From Vitrella brassicaformis CCMP3155 (taxonomy: Eukaryota; Protista; Chromerida), in contig CDMY01000553.1 in the NCBI GenBank assembly GCA_001179505.1, positions 275,203 to 339,202 of the forward strand: a stretch of 64,000 bases of DNA, written 5' to 3'. The notes under the pieces were generated by a model, which was not told the origin of the DNA, searched no databases, and saw only the letters and a list, made by a program, of their open reading frames with translations. Position 1 is the first letter of the stretch, and every line of letters begins with the position of its first letter. This document shows, piece by piece, positions 15,348 through 61,202 of this stretch. A program made the translations under genes and the position numbers.

Positions 15348-17084
15348 TCAAGCATTCCTGCCACCCCTCAGCCTCGCCCGAGCGATCTTGTGTGCAGTCA
15401 TAGCCAGCCTCCCCTTCCCCCTCCCTCCCCCACTCCCCCGCCCCCTCTGGTCTCTCTTCTGTCTCTCCCGCTCTCTCTGCCCATCCCAGTCGACCATCAA
15501 GGGGTCCACCGGGGCACTCATGCCGCTCTGGTATGGCCTCCTCGGCTTCCTCACGGCATGGGGGTTTGTCCAGAAGACGTCAGGGGGCGGCTGGTAGTCC
15601 ACACCAGTGTCCGCTATGTCCAGCTGCATCTGCATCTTGGCAGCCTCGAGAAGGCGTCGGACGTAGGCATACTTCTCGTCCTTGGCGCGGAGTGTCTGCC
15701 AGGTGAAGTAGGGGATGTGGACGACCTTGAAGCCGAGGCGGGTGAGCAGCCGGTGCTTGAGCTTGGAGAAGGACGTCCAGTGGTAGGAGTTCTTGTAGAA
15801 GTGGTGGGGGCCGTCCACCTCTATGATGATGCCGCCGTCACTCAGATCCTCCTCTGCAGCACTCACACACACACACACACACACACCATCCTGCCCCTCT
15901 CCTCCTCCTCTCCCCTTCTGCGCACTGCATGCCCTCACCCCATGTGTGCTTCATGCTGTTTGCAGTGTGCTCCATCGGCCGTGCATATGGCCCCTCGGGC
16001 AGCTCGTCGGGAGGGTGTGGGTCCACACCGATGTCCTTCAGGGCCTCCTGCTCCTCGTGTGGCGTCATCGCACGCACAAAGTCCAACGTGTAGGGGCCCA
16101 GAGATATCTGACGGACGGGAAGACACATGGCAGGGTGTGTCGATGTGTGTGTGGGAGCGGGGGGGGGGGGGGGGGGGGGGGGGNNNNNNNNNNNNNNNNN
16201 NNNNNNNNNNNNNNNNNNNNNNNNNNNNNNNNNNNNNNNNNNNNNNNNNNNNNNNNNNNNNNNNNNNNNNNNNNNNNNNNNNNNNNNNNNNNNNNNNNNN
16301 NNNNNNNNNNNNNNNNNNNNNNNNNNNNNNNNNNNNNNNNNNNNNNNNNNNNNNNNNNNNNNNNNNNNNNNNNNNNNNNNNNNNNNNNNNNNNNNNNNNN
16401 NNNNNNNNNNNNNNNNNNNNNNNNNNNNNNNNNNNNNNNNNNNNNNNNNNNNNNNNNNNNNNNNNNNNNNNNNNNNNNNNNNNGGGGGGGGAGGGGGGCG
16501 CTGACTCCCTCACACACCTCGTGGTAGTGGTGGTAGTGGAGTCCCGCGGCGATGCGCCCGACCTCACGCTGGAGGGCGGATGTGATGCGCTCCTCGGGAG
16601 GCGTCTGCATGCGCACACACACACACACAAGCGGCCGTAGATGCCTTGTGATCGGAACACTGTGGTGTGTGCTGACCTTGGCCGTCCTCCATCTAATGAG
16701 GGTCTCGAGCAGCCCGTCGGGCAGATCGCCATACTCCAACGGCAAATGACCCACCCTGAATCAATCACGAAGGAAGCCAATTCACGCACGCAGGTGCAGG
16801 TGGGGATTCCTTACCTCGCTGCCATCTCGAAGACCTTGAGCTGCGTCAGGGCCACGTGGTCAAGACGGTTCTCGCGATGCACCAGCTGCACACACGACAA
16901 ACACACAACAGGGCAGGGGCATCAACTGGTCAGCGTAGATAGATAGCAGCAGTGTTTTGGGTGACCTGTTTGGTGAGCTGCATGTAGAGGTCAGGCTGGC
17001 CGAGGGAGAAGTACGTCAGGGCGAACAGCAGATTGATGAGCGTCTTGGTGCGACACGATTGCCACACACCAACTGCACACACAG

Positions 17085-22598: not shown

Positions 22599-24238
<1,640 letters not shown>

Positions 24239-25489
24239 AGAGGAGATTGACATAGATCGCTGACACGGCAGAAAGAGGACAGGATTCGATTCATTTCTCG
24301 ACCCATCTCACCTCACCCGTCAGTCAGTCACCCCTCCACAGTTTTCGTCGTATGATTCCATCGTAGCAAGCACCGTTGGCACATATGAGATACACCGCCC
24401 CATGTGTGTGGCTGGCTGTCGGCTGCCCGACTCACTGACTCACTCACTGACTCACTGACTGACCGCTCTACATATCTATCACGATCGATGTGATGGCATG
24501 GCTGCCTCAGGACGTCAGGGAGGGGCAGACAGGACAGGAGGCCACAGAACGGAGAGAGAGGGGCGAGAAGGGTGGACGGTGCGGTGCGCTGTGTTGTGTC
24601 GTTTGGTGTTCCATGTTTGACAGATGGGATGGAATGGCATGCTGCACGGCCGCTGAGTTTTGTTGTCTGTCTGTGAGTGGGTGTTGCCTGATTGATTGAA
24701 TGCCCCCGTCTGTCACGTCACGTCACGTCGTGTGGCAGATTTTTCTTCTCGTTGTGGTGGAGTGTGGTGTGGTGTGGTCGATTGCATTGCACCAGCTGGT
24801 GGCAGCCAGAGATATGCAGATGGGACGTCAGTCACGTCGGGCGATATGTGCGATGATCGATGCACTGAGTGAGTGAGTGAGACATCTCGATGATGGGTGA
24901 AGGAATGACTGATCAATGAAGGGCGTACCGACCCATAACCGACCATACACACACACTGCAGTCAGTCACACTCATGCGCACACCACACCACACCAAACTA
25001 CACCAGGCCGCCGAAAACTACAGGGTGTTCGTTCAGGTGCACATTTTGGGCGTTTCAAAGAAGGCAGGCGAAACTTTGGCTCTGTGGATGTGTGTCAGGG
25101 TTGCGTGGCTGAATGAATGAAGGACTGTCACTCTTAACAACGGGCAGCCGGTCAGTCGAGTATCCAACACTCACAATCATCATGTCGCAGCTCACACACG
25201 CTCCTGCCAATTACAGGAACGGCAAGAGTGCAATCAATCAACCTAGGATGGGGTGGCTCACATGGCCACACACCAACGACTCTCACACAGCCATGTCATG
25301 TCCCACACACGCACCAGGCAATCACGTAGAGAAGAAGACACTCGCGCGCACACACATCCACGTGGTCAACGTACCTCCCTAAGGAACCCTTCTCCCCCCC
25401 AATCTGCCTCAGACGTAAAAAATGCCAGCAGTCTCATATCCTTCAGACGGCCCCACCTCTCTCCCTCCCCCTCCCTCCCTCTGTCTCCC

Positions 25490-26350
25490 TTACTCCCTCT
25501 GCCACTCACTGGGCGGCCGTCTCTCCCTTGTGTTGGTATCTATAATGCTTCGCCTCCATCGCCCGGCGATGTCCAATGGCGGCCTGCTTGGCACCCTCAT
25601 AGCCCAACTCAGCGATTGAGAAGGGCTTCGTCTTCTCTTTGCCGCTCTCCTGCCGGCCTTCCAGCAATTCTTCCTTTTGTCGTGAAAGACGCCCTTGACG
25701 CCGCTCCGGTGCTTTGATAGCTTCCTCACCGACGCACAGCCAGCGCTCTCCATCTCACGACGGTGCTGCTCGGCCAACGCCTGACGGACGGATGCACAAG
25801 AGAGAGACTCAGGGGGAGAGGGAACGGGCGGCGTTGTGCGCACCTTGGCTGTGTCGAAGCCATGGTCTCTGACGGAGAAGTACTTGATCTTCTCCTTCGA
25901 GCCGCCCTTTTCGCACCACGATGCCATCCAGGCCTGGTTCTTCTCATGCCAGCGAACACCCGCCACGTTAGACTGATGCTCTGCAGTTGGTACCACACAT
26001 AATCAATCGGTTGCAGCGGTGTGTTGGATTTGCCTCTTGGTCTCCTCACCGGATTTGGTGATGACGGTCTTCCCCTTGCTGCCGGCCTTGCTGTCGGTGT
26101 CGGCGGCCCACTGGGGGCCAGACATACAGATGGACGACCACACATCACCGGCGGACACCGACGCACCATCCCTCTTGGCCGCCTTGGGCCTCCGGCGTGG
26201 CTGGGGAGACGGTGAGCGGCTGCCGTCATCATGATCATTATGGCTCTCACTTCCACCCTGATCAGACTGGCGGGCGGCCCAAGCCACGATGCTCCTCTGC
26301 CGGGCACGTCGGTCCAGTGTCGCGTCTCCTTCTCGACTCATACGGGGGCG
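25490..26350 (-). pseudogene. Partial duplicate of the 3' half of the ApiAP2 gene, frameshifted in its last AP2 domain
   Basis: Homologous to ~26857-27700. TGG AAG GCC GG CAG GAG lacks 4 nt relative to TGG ACA GCC AGC TGG CAT GAG of the intact copy. Downstream 25312-25610 is near-identical to 26651-26970. The 5' part runs into a gap. Confidence 0.65.
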
Positions 26351-26856
26351 NNNNNNNNNNNNNNNNNNNNNNNNNNNNNNNNNNNNNNNNNNNNNNNNNN
26401 NNNNNNNNNNNNNNNNNNNNNNNNNNNNNNNNNNNNNNNNNNNNNNNNNNNNNNNNNNNNNNNNNNNNNNNNNNNNNNNNNNNNNNNNNNNNNNNNNNNN
26501 NNNNNNNNNNNNNNNNNNNNNNNNNNNNNNNNNNNNNNNNNNNNNNNNNNNNNNNNNNNNNNNNNNNNNNNNNNNNNNNNNNNNNNNNNNNNNNNNNNNN
26601 NNNNNNNNNNNNNNNNNNNNNNNNNNNNNNNNNNNNNNNNNNNNNNNNNNGTCCCACACACGCACCAGGCAATCACGTAGAGAAGAAGACACTCGCGCGC
26701 ACACACATCCACGTGGTCAACGTACCTCCCTAAGGAACCCTTCTCCCCCCCAATCTGCCTCAGACGTAAAAAATGCCAGCAGTCTCATATCCTTCAGACG
26801 GCCCCACCTCTCTCCCTCCCCCTCCCTCCCTCTGTCTCCCTTACTCCCTCTGCCAC

Positions 26857-36621: not shown

Positions 36622-37072
36622 GATGACGCCCGCGAGTGCCGTGGTGCGGATAGAGAGTGAGACAACGGAGAAGAAGGGTTTTGTTGCTGGTCCGCACTGC
36701 TGATAGAACCAAATGGACACTTATAGGTCACAGAGGCTCTCCAGGGGCCTGGAAAGCAATTTCGATAGTGGCGGCTGGGATCAGGCTTGCAGATCCCCGC
36801 CAGACGGCCAGGAGCGCCCTTTTGGTTGTGCCCTGATGATGGCACCGCCTTTAGTGCAGATGACAGCCCAGTCATTTCCATCACGTCCATCCCCTCACAC
36901 ACCCAGCTGCCACTCTCCCTCTATATCGACAACATATCTACCTACCAGCCCATCTGGTCAAATGGGGAGCTTGAACCCAACCCACACACCGAAGCTGTCC
37001 CCTCCCCTCGGCCATCTGCATCTCTCGGCACCTGTCCACAGTGCCCTGGTGGCCGCTCTCGGACAGACCTTG
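36320..37072 (-). repeat. Dispersed repeat unit, copy 1 (5' end and upstream region of the Ulp1-like gene)
   Basis: 36320-36490 is essentially identical to 61203-61373, and 36773-37072 is essentially identical to 60026-60323. The intervening part is diverged but alignable with 61373-61645. Confidence 0.9.
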
Positions 37073-37433
37073 NNNNNNNNNNNNNNNNNNNNNNNNNNNN
37101 NNNNNNNNNNNNNNNNNNNNNNNNNNNNNNNNNNNNNNNNNNNNNNNNNNNNNNNNNNNNNNNNNNNNNNNNNNNNNNNNNNNNNNNNNNNNNNNNNNNN
37201 NNNNNNNNNNNNNNNNNNNNNNNNNNNNNNNNNNNNNNNNNNNNNNNNNNNNNNNNNNNNNNNNNNNNNNNNNNNNNNNNNNNNNNNNNNNNNNNNNNNN
37301 NNNNNNNNNNNNNNNNNNNNNNNNNNNNNNNNNNNNNNNNNNNNNNNNNNNNNNNNNNNNNNNNNNNNNNNNGACGAAGATCTGGGCAGATCTTTGGCTC
37401 AGCAGCGACAGCCAGAACGACTTGCTGCGCCCA

Positions 37434-37749: not shown

Positions 37750-39493
37750 ATGAGTGCAATGGCCCGCATTCCTCGAGTTGTGTCGAAGCGGCTCCCCAGC
37801 CGGCGATGGACGAAGGAGAAATGGAGCCGGTTCGAGAAGGAGTCCAAGCCGGTGACAATCGAGGGCAGTGCAGCGACAGGGAGGAGGCGGCTGGTGAATG
37901 TTGGTGTAGACATGGTGATACGACGGATCTACGGGGGAATGCAATGGATCAGAAAGGACGGGTACGCTGCGCTACAAGTGCCATGCGCCGGGCGGCGGAT
38001 CTTTGCATGTGTCTTCGTGTGTGCTGTGCGTGCGTGGCAGGCCGTTGCTGATTCACTATGCGGCAGTATATCGTGACCACCATGACCAACTGCGTGTGCT
38101 CAGCATCAACCAACACACGCCTAAGTCAGAGATGGACTGGTGGGCGCCACACCGCACAGCACAGCACGGTACACGGGGATTCATCCAACATCATGATGCG
38201 CTGTGAATGAGTGTCTGGTGTGTGCGTGTGTCTTTCTTGTCTTGTCAGGGTGCACCTGCACTTCCTCCGTGCCTGTTGTGACGGCATCCTCACGACGGGC
38301 CAGATTCTCAGATCCGAGCCGTCACTCACATTCGAGCACAAGCAGACCACATACTTCCGGCGGCAGCTTATGGCCGACAGGGAAGACATCGTGGACAAGA
38401 CACACGACGGTCCGCTGCAGGTGTACGTCTTGACATCTGGTGACCACCTGCTGCGGGATGGGCAGGCCGGCAGGAGTAAGGGGCGGCCGATGCTCGAACA
38501 CAAGACAATCAAGGTGGGTGGGCTGAGTACGAGATCTCACGTATCCTCTGTGTGCGCATGTTTTTTGTCGCTCTGGCTGTGTCTGTGTGTGTGCACTCAG
38601 CATCGCTCGTCATCGTGTCAGGTGAATCTGCTGGTGCCGCCAGACAGCCTGCCGGCCGTGCGCAAGGCGCTCGATGGCCGGCCCTGGGTGCAAGTGCTTC
38701 CGATCTCATCACCGCCGAGCAGGAGGGCAGCATCGGCATATGCACGTCAGGCCGACAACAGCGGAGAGACTGACACCATACCTGACATACGTAAGTCAGC
38801 TGCATGTTCTATGAGGACCATCCATCGCTTGATGTGCTCCACATGTCTGTCCATTCAGGCCATCTCCCCTCCCTCAGCAGCCATGCAGCCATCCACTCGG
38901 CCATTTCCCACCTGCAGCACATCAAGAGCACCAGAGCCCCAGCCAACCGACGTCAGCCGGCAGCGGCACAAGACGCCACACCAGCCGACAGGGCAGAGGG
39001 CCCCTCAGTGCGTCTGGGCATCGAGGCGGGTGCGTCGATCAGCCGGTCGCTTCTGCTTCGCAAGGAGGTGGACGTCATCTTCCTGACGGTGTATGCGGGG
39101 CAGGTGCCGCAGAACTGCCAGGTGAGGTGCGCTTGAGTGGCGGGCCAAACGCACCAACGGGGGCGTGGGTGCGGTGCGGATGGCTGTCATCCCCATGGCT
39201 TGTGGCTGCTATGTGGTGTGCAGGGCAATGTGCTTCTTTCTGCGGATGAGCTACGGGCGCGGTACACGTGCTGGCGGGCAGCCACTGAGGTCAGAGAGAG
39301 AAGAGGATACACACATGTCTTTTGTCGGCAAAGTGCCAAGATGGGTGTGTCTGTTTCAGGGTCACTGGACAGTGCTGTGCTTCCGACCAAGGCAATGAAG
39401 TATAGGGGAGAGTGCCATGGCGTGTGCAGATACTCATTTGAACGTCTCGTGTGTATGTTGACTGACATTGCTGATATCGATACGATACGCTGA
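37750..39493 (+). CDS. Divergent RibD C-terminal-type (pyrimidine reductase / DHFR-fold) protein
   Basis: VHLHFLRACCDGILTTGQILRSEPSL resembles RibD H.LRA..DAI.VG..TV..D.P.L. LGIEAGASISRSLLLRKEVDVIFLTVYAG resembles VLVEGG..L...FL...LVDEL. Arg-rich N-terminus. SLDG motif not seen. Confidence 0.6.
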
Positions 39494-39975
39494 TTGATTG
39501 ATGTGCAAAGTGATCGATGCGGTCCGAAAAAGAGAGACACGAGTGGGTCTGCCCTCGAAATAAGTGACTTTCGAAATATGCAGCCAGCCATCTTCACTTG
39601 CCCCTGACCTGACCCACAAAGCACTAATGTCTAGGTAACTAAGGACACGATGCGCTCACCCCGCCCCGCCCGTGTACAGGAACAAGAACACACCCACACA
39701 CGCCGCTGGGCAGAGCAACAAAAAGCCGAGCAGGAGACAGCAGCGCAGCAGCCGAGAAACAGCATCAGACCATATACATACGTCAGGTAGACATGAGTCC
39801 GTTGAAGGCGGCTGCCGTCCGTCTGAGCGACTGCACCACCATGATGGCACACTCAGGGCCGTACTGACGGATCAGCCCCTCAGATAGCCACCCGACGCAT
39901 CCCTCTGGGTACTGGTCAGCGTGTTGGTGGTGCTGGTGGCTCCATGACGTGTGCCGCGGGTTGGCCGCCATCCCC

Positions 39976-42900
39976 TCACCCTTCCAAAACGACGTGCCGA
40001 TGCCGCGGCCGCAAAAAGCACTGAGTGAGGCAACAAGAGACAGACAATACGATGCATGTCAGGCTTTTGTATCCGTCGCTTGTGTCCGTGCGTACGCTCT
40101 GTCGAGTCGTCCTTCGCCCTGCATTACGCCGTTGACGAAAGCTGTCTCCTGACAGGACAACAGATAGAAAGGAGAGCAGCCAGATGGGCAAGGACCATGT
40201 CGGCCGCCGGTAGTCGATGTCTCTGGTACTTTTTGTCTGAGGTCCATGCCGTCGACTGTGAAGCCAGCCGGCACCAGCCAATTCAGCAACATGCGGCCTG
40301 GAGGGAAGGAGCCAGGTGATGGATGCGCTTTGTAGGTCGCGTGCCTACGAGGGCTGTCTTACCGGGGAGTTTGTTTGGCGCCTCCTCGTCTTCCTCAAAG
40401 CCCTTGTCGGCTGGGCAAGGCACAGGATCCTCTGACCCAAAAGGAAGAAACAAGTCATGGGAGTGTTGCGCGCAATATGGATGCTGTCCTTTGCCCACTG
40501 TCTTCTCTTTGTCCATCCGACGTGTCTGCACTCTTCTTCTGCAGGGGAGGAACAGACACGACGCCGTAAATCATCAACCAACATGTGTGTCTCCATCCGT
40601 ATATTCAGCGGCTGACCCTTTGCCTCTTGGCCTTGGCCTTGTTGGTCTGCAGTTCCACTTTCCTGCCCTCGAGCACATAGCTCTTGAGCTCGGCCTGCCG
40701 TGAGTGGTGCACTGCCACACTGTTGAGGATTACCAAGGCGTTCCGGTAGTTCAGACTCGTCGCTGCAAGACACCCCATCGTGGACATGAAACGGCAGACA
40801 CCTCCTCTCTCAACAGCGTGCCTACATGGGCTGGACAGGCATGTGACGGCAATGATTGTGAGGTCGTTCATGCCGCTCTTGCACTGGATGAGGGCGGCCA
40901 GCAGTGACCGCCAGGGAGAGGGCGTGACGATACCCGGCTTGTGAGGCACCGGCGTGTCACACAGATGCTGCAGGTCAACGACACAGACAGATGCAAATAC
41001 TCTGGACGGGGAATGATTCATGCACGATGCTTACCCCTGCAGGGACCACGTCTCTGTCCCCATAGCACCAATACTTGAGCAGCACTCTCTCGTCCTCATC
41101 CGACAAAGTGCCTTCTTCTGCCTTTTCCTCCCCTGTCTCCCCCACGTCGTACACCACCCCTTGCTTCAGCAGCGAATACCCCAGCAGACGAGTCGAGTAG
41201 TTGCAGACCTGCTGCTGCGGCCCCTCCCGAGGCGCTAGAGGTGACCCGGTCACACTGCCAGGACCCCCCTCGCTGCCACAGTCGGCTCGACGGTGCGCAG
41301 TGCTCTTGATCGGGCTGCCTCCGACCTTGCCAAAGACGGTCTCGCGCATTGGTCTGCCGGTGGATGGGGGGACGTTGACGTCTGACGACTGTGTGGGCTG
41401 GGTTGAGCGCTTGGTTGCTCCTGGAGAGGGGTACGGGCTGTCCTTGTCTTCGCTGCTTTGGGTGGGCGGTGCGCTTATGTTGGAGTACCACCAGTCTTCC
41501 TGAGGGCGCGGCGCACAGGAATACGTGTGCAAGAGGATAAGCGATGGTGTCTGTGTCTCCCTACACACCAGTCTTGAGTAGAGGGCTGCTCCTTTTTGCG
41601 CTTTCTGCCTGTTCTCTTCTTCCCTTCGTGCCTTTTCCTGAAAGATATCTCATTATATAGGACAAGGCATTCTTGCACATGAAAATCGCCTTACCTCTGG
41701 GTCCTCCGCTTTGGGCGCAGGCGCCCTTCCCGCGTATGTTCCAGTCAGAGGCGCCCTCTTCGACCCGCTCTGACCGAATGGAGGCGCTCTTCCCCCCGTG
41801 GCATCGCTTTCCGTCCTGGTCAGGCCGAGCGGCATCAGTGCGTCAGCCATGTTGGTCCTGTTCTTTGTCATATTGAGCTCGCCCCCTGTCTGTCTGTTCG
41901 CCTTGGAGTCTGCCGCCGCTGGGGCGATGGGAGTGGAGGTCCTATTGCCGGGAGGAGGGTCTGTACCAAGGGACACAAACAGTGTCGATTCGAGAAGGCA
42001 TGAAGTGGGTCCGCTCACCGAGCGGTCGGAGTGCTTCAGCGGACCCTTTCCCCTTGCCGCCTCGACGCGCATCTTCCGTTTCCGCCTCAGCTTTCTCCGG
42101 CCTCAGCTCTCTCTTCACCATCTCAGTCGCCCCGACTGCGCTGCGGTATCGCACGTCTCCGCCGACCGATCGGCCTTTGGCACGGTTTTCGGGCGCTCTG
42201 CTGCTCTGATCGTCGCCTTTGGTTACCTCCTGTGCGAATGTCCGAATGAATCCCTGCAAGGAACAGACGGTGTCGCTGCAGAGACTGTGTCTCTGTTGGT
42301 TGGTGCTGACCCTTTGAGTGAGCTCCACACTTTCGAGGAACTTGAGTGTGAAGGGAATGATCCAGATGAGGACGATAGCGGTGAGGATACTGACGATGCA
42401 CGTGATGCACTTCATGACGGTCAACACCATCTGCGTCGACGCCTGCATATTCACCACCAGAGACATGTACGTCAAGGGTAGGTATGGCGGGCAGCAGAGG
42501 AGAGCTCACCAGCCAAGCCTCTTGGAAGGACGACAGAAGATGCGTCATGCCGCAGAAGAAGATGAAAGCCTGCAAAACATGCACACGGAGACAAGATGGG
42601 AAAAAAGGACTCTGAGACGTGAAATGGATGGATGCGTCTCACGATAAACAGCGATCCGACACACAGGAGCTCCAGCGACTGTCTGGCAGTGAAGTCAGCG
42701 CTGCCAAGCTGACGGCTCATGGGGAAGAAATCTGCAAACGAGACGACAGGCGATCTGTGAGGTGCGAATCAGAGATGAAGAGGTCCACTCACCGACTCGC
42801 AGCTTTGACTTGGTGAGAAAGAGAAACAGTTGCAGCGGGATCGAGACATAAGAAATGGCAATCAATACGTCAAACAGGGAGTCCAACAGACGCTGAACAA

Positions 42901-43353
42901 GACACAAACACAGCAAACAAATGTTGAATTCAAGCACATGCAGCCATCACAGTCACTCATCTTGACCTGCGTTGAGGACGAGTGTGTGAGGAGGTATTGG
43001 TGCCCTCCGTCGGTCTGCACGATAAATGCCTGGGTTCCCTTGAGCACCATGTGCACTCCCACCTTCTGCCCCCCCTCATCGGTGAACCGGCACGTCACAT
43101 GCTCCCCTTCCCGCCCACCCCCCAAGTGACTGTCCCGATGAAGCCGTCTCTCGCTCGTTCCGTTGGCTGCAGGGCCCCGCTTATGCGGCGGCGGCGGCCG
43201 TTCCCTCTTCGATGGCCACCACAGCTTGTGCAGGTGGTGAGGGGCGGGTGTGTTCTTGCGCAGGTTGTTGTTCACGGCGGGTGAGAATGCAGGCAAGGAG
43301 GCGAGCAGAAGGATGGCTGCCAACCACCACCGCATGAAAGCTGATGGGCGCAT
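39976..43353 (-). CDS. Ethylene-receptor-like membrane protein: signal peptide, N-terminal extension, ETR1-type three-TM ethylene-binding domain, and long cytoplasmic tail without recognisable kinase
   Basis: Phase-checked exons: 42892-42793 RLLDSLFDVLIAISYVSIPLQLFLFLTKSK; 42731-42643 ..LELLCVGSLFI; 42569-42510 AFIFFCGMTHLLSSFQEAWL; 42442-42311 ASTQMVLTVMKCITCIVSILTAIVLIWIIPFTLKF. These match ETR1 TM1-3. The 3' end is uncertain (40455 or ~39976 depending on splicing). Confidence 0.85.
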
Positions 43354-43463
43354 GTTGTGAATGGAAGATAAAACAGGACGTTGAGCCCTCTTCGAGATCA
43401 ATTCGCACTTTTTTCCCTCCTCGAGATCCCATCCTTAAGCTCGCAATCGCGATCCAATCCCAA

Positions 43464-45351
43464 ATGGCGTCTGCTGGCGGTGGAGCGGCGCTTCGGAGGA
43501 GAAGGAAGAAGGTGCTGATATGTGTGTCGACCTTCGACGAACATATGGACTTCGCGCCATCCATGACGCAATCTTCGCCGCCAGATGCGCCAGCAGGCAC
43601 GGCTGACCACCCTGCGCCTCTTGCACAGGCGGCTCTCCCATCAACAAGCTGTGCAGATCAGCCCCTTCCCTCACATGCTGCCCCGGTGCCTGCGGCCGGT
43701 CAGCAGCAGCTAGAGATAGAGGAGGGAAGCAGCGATATCATGAACGTAAGCAAACAACAGCATGGCAAACACACAAACCACGGGTGTTTTGTGTTTCAGT
43801 ATCGCAAACGGCAGCGTAAGCGTTGGGAAGCCCAGCAGCAGCTGCAACAGGAGGCAAGTGCAGCAGCAGCTGGGGATGAGGGAGAGGAGGCGCGCAAGAC
43901 GTCCCGGACGTCGCTGACATCTTCGCCTGCAGCACGGCCGGGGTGTGTCGTGTGCGCATCGTCTGTGGCAGCTGCTCCATCTGAAGCGAAAGCCTAGTTG
44001 CAGCTTCTGTCCTGGTATGTGTGCTGGTGTGTACGTGGAGGCAGGAAGAGAGCCGCCATAGCTACCTACAATGTGTTGTGCTTGTGACTGAATCAGGAAT
44101 GTGGACGGGTGCGACAAGAGGGATTTAGATGTGCGGCAGGCGGCCGTCTATGAGTGGATCAAGGAGAACAAGCCAGACATCGTCTTCCTCCAGGAGGTCG
44201 TCAACACAACGCTGGTCGGTAGACCTGTCACGATAACAACACAATACATGCGACAAGATACATGCGTGCCCATTCACAGTGCACTTGCGTTGTTCTGCAG
44301 ACCATCCTGCGCAAGCATCTGTCATACACATATGAGATAATCACACCCAAACACCAACTGTGAGCGACAGGATGGATGCTTACACACTCACCATTGCCTG
44401 TCTGTCTGACTGTCATTTGTTTGCTTGCGTCAGGTTCAGCGAACAGCCGCCTTGCAAGTCGTGTCCTCATGTTTGTGCCATCCTGCTGGCCAAACAGTCC
44501 ACGCGGCCGTGCAGCGAGCCGTCGACCTTGTGGTACCCCAACAGCAACATGCGGTGGGTGCCAACCGCCATCTCCCAGCGAACCGATGTTCGTTGGGTCA
44601 TTCTGCACGCACCTCACCTGCTGTGTCTTCCTGTCCTGTCATGCAGGCATTTGCTGAGCATCCGTGCTCGCCCTACAGCCGCCGCGGCAGCACATGCGGA
44701 GGTATCAGTCAGCCGGGCACATGTCTGGATGCCATGTCCGCGGTATCGCTTGATTGCCTGCTTCTCTCTTCAGTTGAAGCTGGCTACGAGCCACATGGAG
44801 AGCTTGAAGCACAGTAGCTATCAACGTGTAGACCAACTGCACAGGACCGTCGAACTCATGGACCGGTACGAAGCGCAGAGCAGCACACAGAAGTGTGCAT
44901 CAGATCTGGGCTGCATGCAGGTGTCGGGACGACACCGCCACGCCCAACGTGTGTACGGTCATCGTAGGAGGCGCCCTCAATCTGCGAGACTGGGAGGTGA
45001 ATTGTGCAGGTACTCTTTTCTGCCGTGGAGATACCAAATATCCCGTCATGTTTCCCTTTTTCTCGCCTCTGTATGTGTTTGTGTGCAGGCAGCATGCCCC
45101 CTCACATTCATGACGTGTGGGAGCTGCTGGGCAGGCCCGAGGGCTGTGGCGGCACGTGGAAACCTCACGGCGACAGCCACGTTTCCCGCCGGTTTGACAG
45201 GCTGCTGATCACACACCGGAGCCAGGCAGCACCTGCCTGCCGGTGGCAGCCCGTGTCGATGGAGCTGGTGGGCAGTGGCCGCTTGCTGTACGGCAGTGGC
45301 CCCTTCATCTCGGATCACTGCGGGGTGCTGGTGCAGCTGCAGCTCAGCTGA
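43464..45351 (+). CDS. TDP2: TDP2-like tyrosyl-DNA phosphodiesterase (EEP family), possibly inactive
   Basis: LLSW|NVDG, PDIVFLQEV, ATSHMES..QRVDQL, TVIVGGALNLRDWE, DVWELLGRPE..TW, RFDRLL and ISDHCG align along the human TDP2 catalytic domain. Confidence 0.8.
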
Positions 45352-59466: not shown

Positions 59467-60025
59467 TGGTTTTGGCCTTGAAGCTCTAGTGCCAGTCTAG
59501 TCTAGTCTAGTTTCCTGCCTCAGTCTGTGTGTCCTCTGTGTGTGTGTGTGTGTGTGTTTGTGTGGATCTGTGTCGATCTATGTGCAAACGCGACAACCGC
59601 GGCGCGGCGCGGAGCTCATCCCCCCTGCCGCTGGCTTGTGGGTGGTATGTGGGTGCACACAGACCAGACCGGCCCCCACACACACAGCAATGCAATGGGT
59701 CACTCACCGTATGAGTGCGTGGGCGNNNNNNNNNNNNNNNNNNNNNNNNNNNNNNNNNNNNNNNNNNNNNNNNNNNNNNNNNNNNNNNNNNNNNNNNNNN
59801 NNNNNNNNNNNNNNNNNNNNNNNNNNNNNNNNNNNNNNNNNNNNNNNNNNNNNNNNNNNNNNNNNNNNNNNNNNNNNNNNNNNNNNNNNNNNNNNNNNNN
59901 NNNNNNNNNNNNNNNNNNNNNNNNNNNNNNNNNNNNNNNNNNNNNNNNNNNNNNNNNNNNNNNNNNNNNNNNNNNNNNNNNNNNNNNNNNNNNNNNNNNN
60001 NNNNNNNNNNNNNNNNNNNNNNNNN

Positions 60026-60902: not shown

Positions 60903-61202
60903 NNNNNNNNNNNNNNNNNNNNNNNNNNNNNNNNNNNNNNNNNNNNNNNNNNNNNNNNNNNNNNNNNNNNNNNNNNNNNNNNNNNNNNNNNNNNNNNNNN
61001 NNNNNNNNNNNNNNNNNNNNNNNNNNNNNNNNNNNNNNNNNNNNNNNNNNNNNNNNNNNNNNNNNNNNNNNNNNNNNNNNNNNNNNNNNNNNNNNNNNNN
61101 NNNNNNNNNNNNNNNNNNNNNNNNNNNNNNNNNNNNNNNNNNNNNNNNNNNNNNNNNNNNNNNNNNNNNNNNNNNNNNNNNNNNNNNNNNNNNNNNNNNN
61201 NN

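What the first reader, a model, noticed from the sequence alone, without database searches (positions are those of the whole stretch)
39976..42253. The ethylene-receptor-like protein has a kinase-less, unrecognised cytoplasmic output
SEEN: after TM3 the phase-consistent exons encode about 500+ aa. This is mostly S/P/G/K-rich, plus an ordered-looking block (QVCNYSTRLLGYSLLKQGVVYDV..VLLKYWCYGD..WRSLLAALIQCKSGMNDLTIIAVTCL..LNYRNALVILNSVAVHHSRQAELKSYVL) and a basic tail. I find no H-box (xHExRTP), no N/G1/F/G2 boxes and no receiver (DD..D..K) in any frame. KNOWN: plant and most microbial ethylene receptors couple the sensor to GAF plus His kinase, with or without a receiver. INFERENCE: signalling uses a new, non-two-component route. 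The ordered block may be a degenerate GAF (GFIRTFAQEV weakly recalls ETR1 GRHVRMLTHEI).
Basis: partly seen in the sequence, partly recalled or inferred. Interest (0 to 1): 0.75.

Follow-up and report, generated by a model that had tools for sequence, protein, structure and literature searches.

The report
Kinase-less ethylene-sensor protein, orphan tail
The alga Vitrella brassicaformis makes a membrane protein with a plant-type copper/ethylene-binding sensor whose roughly 600-residue inner tail has no kinase, receiver or other recognisable domain and no relatives, so any signal must leave by an unknown, non-phosphorelay route.

Summary
Observation confirmed. The minus-strand gene (ATG 43353, stop 39783-39785, 16 exons) equals a public 852-aa Vitrella brassicaformis CCMP3155 gene model. 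Spliced RNA contigs from two studies support the 12 introns between 42642 and 40021. One 58-nt intron (41961-42018) rests only on frame and the public model.

After TM3 come about 600 residues:
- a low-hydrophobicity linker (about 265-540);
- an ordered-looking block (543-690) ending in a long helix;
- a K/R cluster (690-699);
- a C-terminal region (726-852) with a His-rich motif.

Only ETR1_N passes Pfam (58.5 bits). Pfam, NCBIfam, PDB sequences, my own filter-free HK, GAF and PAS profiles, and six-frame genome scans found no HisKA, HATPase_c, receiver, GAF or PAS.

The tail has no relative in 1.84 billion representatives (exon 9 only), in the word-index searches, or in its own genome.

The "degenerate GAF" idea has one weak lead: language-model features score 0.89-0.92 to GAF clusters. 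No alignment or confident fold supports it.

A sample of 30 bacterial EBD genes all carry recognisable domains, mostly kinases. This scan has already noted the gene and its missing kinase (s1-252815). A 2020 review lists chromerids among clades with cytokinin or ethylene receptor homologues. I rate it a new variant of a known kind, moderate interest, mechanism inferred.

The parts
39783..43353 (-). Whole coding span of the Vitrella EBD gene: 16 exons, 852 aa, ATG at 43353, stop codon at 39783-39785. The 3' UTR reaches at least 39571.
   Evidence: Exon translations match public model P0001 residue for residue. RNA contigs from X1 and X7 support the splicing.
42311..42892 (-). Exons 2-5 encode the three-helix copper/ethylene-binding domain (residues about 130-256).
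   Evidence: Pfam ETR1_N scores 58.5 bits on P0001 and 66 bits on residues 125-265. TM1 Asp, Tyr, Ile, Pro and the TM2 FIFFCGMTH motif align with bacterial EBDs.
42019..42253 (-). Exon 6, residues 257-334: the post-TM3 linker helix and the start of the low-complexity tail.
   Evidence: X7 record 19 covers 42050-42252 and is spliced to exon 5. The segment aligns with the bacterial post-TM3 linker.
41961..42018 (-). Inferred 58-nt intron (GTGAGC..ACAG). If it is not spliced, the frame stops at about 41942 and gives a protein of about 350 aa.
   Evidence: No listed RNA contig covers 41952-42049. Frame continuity and the public model support the intron.
41212..41960 (-). Exons 7-8 and the 5' part of exon 9, residues 335-542: G/A/S/P/R/T-rich linker with few hydrophobic residues.
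   Evidence: Order-promoting residue fraction is 0.10-0.23 per 30-aa window. RNA joints lie at 41500-41568 and 41638-41694. No Pfam hit.
40617..41211 (-). 3' part of exon 9 plus exons 10-11, residues 543-697: ordered-looking block ending in a long helix (about 652-701) and the K/R cluster at 690-699.
   Evidence: Hydrophobic fraction is 0.30-0.40. AF2 is confident only for the terminal helix, pLDDT 83. Language-model features lean towards GAF. My GAF, PAS and HK profiles score at shuffle level.
39786..40538 (-). Exons 12-16, residues 698-852: an acidic patch, then a C-terminal region with a GRGIG motif (778-782), a His-rich stretch (802-808) and several Cys.
   Evidence: All five introns are seen in RNA contigs. 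No Pfam, NCBIfam or PDB hit. No relatives for residues 602-852.

Best explanation
This is the cytoplasmic tail of a genuine, expressed Vitrella brassicaformis membrane protein.

Layout:
- a signal peptide;
- an outer domain of about 100 aa;
- a three-helix copper/ethylene-binding domain with the ligand residues intact;
- a tail of about 600 aa with no histidine kinase, receiver, GAF or PAS domain detectable by sequence, and no detectable relative anywhere.

The tail is a lineage-specific sequence with four parts: a roughly 280-aa flexible linker, a roughly 150-aa ordered block ending in a long helix, a basic cluster, and a Cys/His-bearing C-terminal region of about 125 aa.

Inferred mechanism: ligand-dependent movement of the membrane domain passes through the helix after TM3. 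It changes how the ordered block and C-terminal region bind partner proteins. This resembles how plant receptors act through bound CTR1 and EIN2 rather than phosphotransfer, but here there is no kinase-like docking domain at all.

Shown: gene structure, expression, an intact sensor, absence of two-component modules, and orphan status. Inferred: cytosolic orientation, disorder, and any signalling role of the tail.
For: - Gene and expression: spliced RNA contigs from two studies cover 12 introns. The frame is open across all exons, with 0 stops in 591 tail codons against 17 and 12 in the other frames. The translation is identical to public model P0001, sourced to Vitrella brassicaformis CCMP3155.
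- Sensor: ETR1_N is above Pfam's cut-off, and the key TM1 and TM2 residues are conserved against six bacterial EBDs.
- No two-component parts: plus the six-frame genome scans.
- Orphan tail: exon 9 (residues 447-601) finds only itself among 1.84e9 representatives. The tail 265-852 and residues 602-852 find only self or nothing. There is no paralogue of residues 540-852 in the genome.
- Segment layout: composition profile and the AF2 helix.
- Contrast: all 30 EBD genes in a 401-genome bacterial sample, and 4 nearer relatives, carry recognisable PAS, GAF, HK or GGDEF/EAL domains.
- No EIN3 DNA-binding domain was found in the genome.
Against: - No experiment or conservation signal shows that the tail does anything. 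With no relatives, purifying selection cannot be measured.
- Both AF2 models have very low confidence (pLDDT 31 and 40). 'Ordered block' therefore rests on composition only.
- One intron (41961-42018) lacks RNA support in the contigs shown. Without it the protein would stop after about 350 aa.
- Only exon 9 went through the filter-free 1.84e9-protein search. The rest of the tail was searched only through the 5-residue word index, within length bands 138-439 aa and 469-1491 aa.
- Language-model features hint at a GAF-like module, which would make the tail less 'unrecognised'.
Confidence: 0.6

Rival explanations
1. The tail is a decayed canonical receptor. Residues 543-690 would be a very diverged GAF (or PAS) module. 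The region after the long helix would be a relic of the DHp and catalytic domains. The protein would then be an extreme version of plant subfamily-2 receptors, not a new output.
For: - Language-model features of residues 543-702 sit nearest GAF clusters: at least 23 of 30 named hits, scores 0.89-0.92.
- The low-confidence AF2 models give a helix-strand-strand-helix ... strands ... long-helix order that is compatible with GAF or PAS.
- The segment order of module, long helix, then a G-rich GRGIG motif mimics GAF, DHp and G2 box. The only HK-profile alignment is GRGIG against the G2 box.
Against: - Pfam GAF, PAS, HisKA and HATPase: nothing at E<=10.
- GAF HMM: -1.8 bits, and 48% of shuffles do as well.
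- hhalign: probability 0.6%, and the alignment is out of register.
- CA HMM: -1.4 bits, 22% of shuffles as good. DHp+CA HMM: -3.1 bits, 42%.
- PAS HMM: -1.3 bits, 44%.
- There is no conserved His in an H-box context.
- The language-model score range is reached by 4-10% of shuffled proteins, and the shared-feature counts (103-129) are well under the 170 typical of true family members (tool notes).
- My GAF HMM has limited reach. It missed a Pfam GAF_2 domain in L094.
Confidence: 0.17
2. The membrane domain is kept for copper binding or handling, or for another non-signalling role. The tail would then be a fast-evolving, mostly disordered appendage without a defined output.
For: - The tail has no relatives or paralogues.
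- Nearly half of it is poor in hydrophobic residues.
- The His-rich and Cys-containing C-terminus could bind metal.
- No functional work exists on any SAR homologue (PMC7700396).
Against: - A 591-codon frame is kept open across 11 spliced exons, with coding-type GC3.
- The ordered-looking segments and the fully conserved ligand residues argue for a maintained, functional protein.
- Every characterised EBD protein is a sensor (PMC11819568, PMC6682694).
Confidence: 0.15
3. The model merges two units. If intron 41961-42018 is not spliced, translation stops at about 41942, giving a sensor of about 350 aa with a short tail. The downstream exons would then be UTR or a separate product.
For: No listed RNA contig bridges 41952-42049. 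Read straight through, the exon 6 frame meets a stop.
Against: - The candidate intron has a consensus donor identical to another intron of this gene, a size typical of the gene (58 nt against 57-81), and it restores the frame exactly.
- Ten spliced, frame-preserving exons downstream with zero stops are not expected of a UTR.
- The public model agrees.
- The coverage gaps fit low depth, about 3-8.
Confidence: 0.08

Closest known systems
Plant ethylene receptors (ETR1, ERS1; subfamily 2: ETR2, ERS2, EIN4)
   Same: Three-helix N-terminal copper/ethylene-binding domain with the TM2 Cys and His and the TM1 Asp, Tyr, Ile, Pro residues. Output in plants works by protein-protein contact rather than phosphorelay, and subfamily 2 has a degenerate kinase (established knowledge; PMC6324907).
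   Different: - No GAF directly after TM3, and no DHp, catalytic or receiver domain even in degenerate, detectable form.
- A linker of about 280 aa and an orphan C-terminal half.
- A signal peptide and a roughly 100-aa outer domain.
- A 21-aa insertion in the TM1-TM2 loop.
Bacterial EBD proteins (SynEtr1, AzoEtr1 and the relatives found here)
   Same: The EBD is 29-37% identical, including the FIFFCGMTH motif. The sensor is modular, and some bacterial members lack a kinase: PAS-GGDEF-EAL, PAS-GAF-GGDEF and GGDEF alone.
   Different: Every bacterial tail examined has recognisable domains. At least 25 of 30 in an even sample are histidine kinases. The Vitrella tail has none. The bacterial N-terminal His/Cys/Trp motif before TM1 is also absent.
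Eukaryotic non-plant EBD histidine kinases (early-diverging fungi, Capsaspora, Acanthamoeba, the diatom Fistulifera)
   Same: EBD-bearing membrane proteins outside plants. SAR members are known, and chromerids are listed among SAR clades with cytokinin or ethylene receptor homologues (PMC6324907; PMC7700396).
   Different: Those were found by searching for HisKA and HATPase_c, so all are kinases by construction. The seven Vitrella HKs reported there are other genes. The HK hits in this genome lie on other contigs.

Membership tests
ETR1-type ethylene-binding domain (Pfam PF25487 ETR1_N) | Profile score above the curated cut-off (27 bits) | tested here: met
   58.5 bits on P0001 and 66.1 bits on residues 125-265. 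Single exon pieces are collinear but below threshold.
ETR1-type ethylene-binding domain (Pfam PF25487 ETR1_N) | Three TM helices with the Cu(I) ligands Cys and His four residues apart in TM2, and Asp, Tyr, Ile, Pro in TM1 | tested here: met
   Hydropathy segments at 131-157, 179-208 and 214-253. FIFFCGMTH and Y, I, P are invariant in the alignment with six bacterial EBDs.
ETR1-type ethylene-binding domain (Pfam PF25487 ETR1_N) | Saturable ethylene binding that depends on copper | not testable with these tools
   Needs a 14C-ethylene binding assay on the expressed domain.
Canonical two-component ethylene receptor (EBD-GAF-HisKA-HATPase_c, with or without receiver) | GAF domain following the EBD | tested here: not met
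   - Nothing follows TM3 directly, and no Pfam GAF, GAF_2 or GAF_3 hit appears at E<=10.
- Genome scans with GAF profiles miss this locus.
- My own HMM and hhalign score at shuffle level.
- The only lead is a weak language-model signal for residues 543-702.
Canonical two-component ethylene receptor (EBD-GAF-HisKA-HATPase_c, with or without receiver) | DHp (HisKA) with H-box and HATPase_c with N/G1/F/G2 boxes | tested here: not met
   Pfam and NCBIfam find none. The filter-free CA and DHp+CA HMMs score -1.4 and -3.1 bits, within shuffles. There are no six-frame hits on contig C553.
Canonical two-component ethylene receptor (EBD-GAF-HisKA-HATPase_c, with or without receiver) | Receiver domain (hybrid type only) | tested here: not met
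   No Response_reg hit in P0001 or on C553 in the six-frame scan.
GAF/PAS-like small-molecule or dimerisation module (for residues 543-690) | Alpha/beta fold with a central antiparallel sheet, shown by a confident model or a profile match | tested here: inconclusive
   AF2 single-sequence models have pLDDT 31 and 40, too low for fold searches. The ESM Atlas model has pLDDT 0.39 and TM scores below 0.4 to everything. The PAS HMM scores -1.3 bits.

The most novel reading that the evidence does not exclude
The protein joins sensor and messenger in one chain. Ligand state of the membrane domain would control cleavage or release of the C-terminal half, which carries an NLS-like KAKAKRQRKK cluster next to the ordered block. 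That fragment would then move to the nucleus or another compartment. This would be a one-protein analogue of the plant receptor-to-EIN2 C-end relay, and a new output class for ethylene-binding domains in eukaryotes.
Probability: 0.07. Interest if true: 0.8.

Novelty: new variant of a known kind. Interest (0 to 1): 0.45.

Why it matters
Every eukaryotic ethylene-binding-domain protein described so far was found by its histidine kinase. Kinase-less versions were therefore invisible by design (PMC6324907).

This gene shows that an intact sensor can be kept and expressed in an alveolate alga, a free-living relative of apicomplexan parasites, with a long tail that has no known signalling domain. 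If the sensor binds ethylene or another small ligand through copper, the tail offers a way to find a non-phosphorelay output.

It also bears on how sensor modules are re-wired after endosymbiotic or horizontal acquisition. Against that, the gene and its domain are already in public databases, a review already lists chromerids among clades with cytokinin or ethylene receptor homologues, and nothing yet shows function.

Tried and rejected
- **Structure prediction.** AF2 single-sequence models of residues 540-852 and 543-702 gave pLDDT 31 and 40. I ran no fold searches on them, because matches from such models are meaningless. The ESM Atlas model is equally poor.
- **GAF.** My 24-sequence HMM and hhalign both scored at shuffle level. 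That HMM is of limited power: it missed a Pfam GAF_2 domain in L094.
- **Kinase relic.** The GRGIG, VDGMD and ETAF spacing looked like G2, G1 and F boxes by eye. The CA and DHp+CA HMMs reject this.
- **PAS.** This is the usual module after bacterial EBDs, and it is rejected at sequence level. As a positive control, the PAS HMM scored 48 bits on L100.
- **EBD word search.** It returned only the protein itself, so no eukaryotic EBD survey was possible. Bacterial relatives came from pattern scanning instead.
- **Papon and Binder 2019.** The paper is not held.
- **Joined exon sequences.** I built and sent none. Exons were searched by reference, and the spliced protein used later is the database's own record, returned.
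Full report
**What is there**

The window is contig C553:275203-339202 of a 72.7-Mb, 1064-contig assembly. A protein source record names the organism Vitrella brassicaformis CCMP3155.

The finding lies in a minus-strand gene. Pfam ETR1_N matched three separate open stretches in collinear order, for TM1, TM2 and TM3.

Two runs from different studies (X1, X7) hold spliced contigs. Their joints are CT..AC on the plus strand, which is GT..AG for a minus-strand gene. DNA runs (X2, X5) are colinear with the genome.

After resolving the one-base ambiguities, these contigs give these introns:
- 42570-42642
- 42443-42509
- 42254-42310
- 41638-41694
- 41500-41568
- 40968-41034
- 40763-40825
- 40539-40616
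- 40432-40498
- 40298-40362
- 40149-40229
- 40021-40095

All are 57-81 nt.

No listed contig covers 41952-42049. Read straight through, the exon 6 frame stops near 41942. A 58-nt GTGAGC..ACAG intron at 41961-42018 restores the frame.

With it, the frame is open from TM2 to a stop at 39783-39785. The tail has 591 codons with no stop, against 17 and 12 in the other two frames. GC3 is 0.70. The chance of an open frame by composition alone is about 8e-9.

**The public model**

I searched the spliced model exon by exon, by reference. I built no joined sequence.

Exon 9 (41035-41499) went to the 1.84-billion-representative search. It returned one protein, P0001 (852 aa, 100% identity at residues 447-601), and nothing else at E<=0.001.

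P0001 equals my exon translations residue for residue, including the inferred intron. From there on I used that database record. It carries the Pfam ETR1_N label in public sources.

I re-derived both points independently.

**Anatomy of the protein**

- Residues 5-27 are a hydrophobic signal-like segment.
- Three TM segments lie at 131-157, 179-208 and 214-253.
- Aligned with six bacterial EBDs, the TM1 Tyr, Ile and Pro and the whole FIFFCGMTH motif of TM2 are invariant. That motif holds the copper-ligand Cys and His.
- Vitrella has a 21-aa insertion in the TM1-TM2 loop. That loop is net positive, which fits a cytosolic loop and a cytosolic tail (inference).
- The segment just after TM3 (GFIRTFAQEV...) aligns with the bacterial linker helix. 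It does not align with a GAF start.
- Residues about 265-540 have 10-23% order-promoting residues.
- Residues 543-690 have 30-40% order-promoting residues.
- A K/R cluster lies at 690-699, followed by an acidic patch.
- Residues 726-852 contain GRGIG (778-782), a His-rich stretch (802-808) and several Cys.
- There is no TM segment in the tail.

**Is a known domain hidden in the tail?**

Sequence searches found nothing:
- Pfam at E<=10 on the whole protein and on five pieces gives only ETR1_N, plus a chance TraX match at E 0.06.
- NCBIfam gives none.
- PDB sequences give none at E<=10.
- Six-frame scans of the whole genome find HisKA, HATPase_c and Response_reg on other contigs and none on C553. 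Those hits fit the seven HKs reported for this species (PMC6324907).
- Six-frame scans with GAF and GAF_2 hit two other loci only.

I scored the tail with filters off against 1000 shuffles.

| Profile | Score (bits) | Shuffles doing as well |
|---|---|---|
| 24 GAF domains | -1.8 | 48% |
| 30 catalytic (CA) domains | -1.4 | 22% |
| DHp+CA | -3.1 | 42% |
| 16 PAS domains | -1.3 | 44% |

- hhalign against the GAF alignment gave probability 0.6%, and 8% of shuffles scored as well.
- The only HK-profile alignment was GRGIG against the G2 box.
- The PAS profile scored 48 bits on a held-out positive control.
- My GAF profile is the weakest of these. It missed a GAF_2 domain that Pfam sees in L094.

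One positive lead remains. Language-model features of residues 543-702 sit nearest GAF clusters, with scores 0.89-0.92 and 103-129 of 256 shared features. By the tool's own calibration, 4-10% of shuffled proteins reach that score. True family members usually share 170 or more features. I treat it as a lead, not a finding.

Structure prediction did not help:
- AF2 without an alignment gave pLDDT 31 for residues 540-852 and 40 for residues 543-702.
- Only a long helix at about 652-701 was confident.
- The ESM Atlas model has pLDDT 0.39.
- I ran no fold searches on these models.

**Relatives**

- The tail (265-852) found only itself among proteins of 469-1491 aa.
- Residues 602-852 found nothing among proteins of 138-439 aa.
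- The genome has no paralogue of residues 540-852.
- Only exon 9 had the filter-free deep search, so 'orphan' is firm for residues 447-601 and provisional for the rest.

**Context**

Pattern scanning found six bacterial EBD relatives at 30-37% identity. Their tails are PAS-HWE kinase, PAS-GGDEF-EAL, PAS-GAF-GGDEF and HisKA-HATPase.

In an even sample of 401 genomes of that phylum, 27 carry 30 EBD genes of 401-1253 aa:
- At least 25 are histidine kinases.
- One is a GGDEF protein.
- Four are PAS/GAF arrays cut by the locus end.
- None has an unrecognisable tail.

Two qualifications apply. PAS, not GAF, is the usual neighbour in these bacteria. Kinase-less EBD proteins with cyclic-di-GMP outputs do exist.

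The literature agrees that prokaryotic EBD proteins have varied outputs. [quoted passage not shown]

The eukaryote-wide survey that found EBD kinases in fungi, Capsaspora, Acanthamoeba and a diatom selected proteins by HisKA and HATPase_c. It could not have seen this gene (PMC6324907).

**How it most likely works**

Shown:
- an intact, expressed sensor domain;
- a long translated tail;
- no two-component module.

Inferred:
- The tail is cytosolic.
- About half of it is flexible.
- Any signal leaves by changed protein-protein contacts of the ordered block and C-terminal region, not by phosphotransfer.

Plant receptors already work through bound partners rather than phosphorelay. This protein would take that further by lacking even the kinase-like docking domain.

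The genome shows no EIN3 DNA-binding domain. It has a single EDR1/CTR1/ARMC3-type domain locus, which I could not examine.

Rivals:
- a decayed GAF-kinase that sequence methods cannot see (0.17);
- a non-signalling copper-binding protein with a drifting tail (0.15);
- a truncated or split product if the 58-nt intron is not removed (0.08).

**Verdict**

The absence claim is well supported. The 'new route' is a reasonable inference without direct evidence. The GAF idea stays open but weak.

The gene and its domain are already public, and this scan has already noted the missing kinase. What is added here:
- RNA support for the tail exons;
- explicit negative tests for GAF, PAS and HK;
- the orphan status of the tail;
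- the contrast with bacterial EBD proteins.

I rate it a new variant of a known kind, of moderate interest.

Noticed in passing
G000:C104 about 24100-25800 (L003 1100-1700; L050 5882-7168, minus strand): Probable second EBD gene in Vitrella.
- A TM1-like piece hits ETR1_N at E 6.8e-4.
- Downstream pieces read FCGTTH (TM2-like) and LVWIIPSML (TM3-like).
- The pieces are separated by (CA)n-rich introns.
- No HisKA or HATPase_c hit on that contig; the only Response_reg hit there is a chance-level one (E 0.4) about 150 kb away. No similarity to the P0001 tail.
   Followed up: partly
window 38900-39898, plus strand: A convergent plus-strand gene ends near 39898. X7 record 16 is spliced with GT..AG at about 39119-39220 and 39288-39357. 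The EBD transcript reaches down to at least 39571, so the two 3' ends overlap by about 330 nt.
   Followed up: no
window 43353-43482: A divergent plus-strand transcript (X7 record 20, 2472 nt, introns at 43746-43799, 44014-44095 and 44214-44299) reaches to 43482. That is only about 130 nt from the EBD gene's ATG at 43353. The two genes have either a very short shared promoter region or overlapping 5' ends.
   Followed up: no
G000:C657:22563-22865, plus strand: This is the single genome hit to the EDR1/CTR1/ARMC3 peptidase-like domain (28.1 bits, just above cut-off). The genome gave no EIN3 DNA-binding domain hit above threshold. I could not fetch the locus to see whether a kinase is attached.
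   Followed up: no
P0001 residues 155-178 (window about 42643-42810): The Vitrella EBD has a 21-aa, net-positive insertion in the TM1-TM2 loop. It also lacks the His/Cys/Trp motif that precedes TM1 in all six bacterial relatives. Instead it has a signal peptide and an N-terminal domain of about 100 aa with no Pfam hit.
   Followed up: partly
L081-L110 (bacterial loci): In a 401-genome sample of one bacterial phylum, 27 genomes carry an EBD. PAS, not GAF, is the usual module after the sensor. One protein is EBD-GGDEF with no kinase.
   Followed up: partly
window 16184-16483, 26351-26650, 37073-37372, 59726-60025, 60903-61202: Five runs of exactly 300 N. These are scaffold gaps, and they explain the apparent AT-rich dip near 37000-37400 in the composition profile.
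   Followed up: yes
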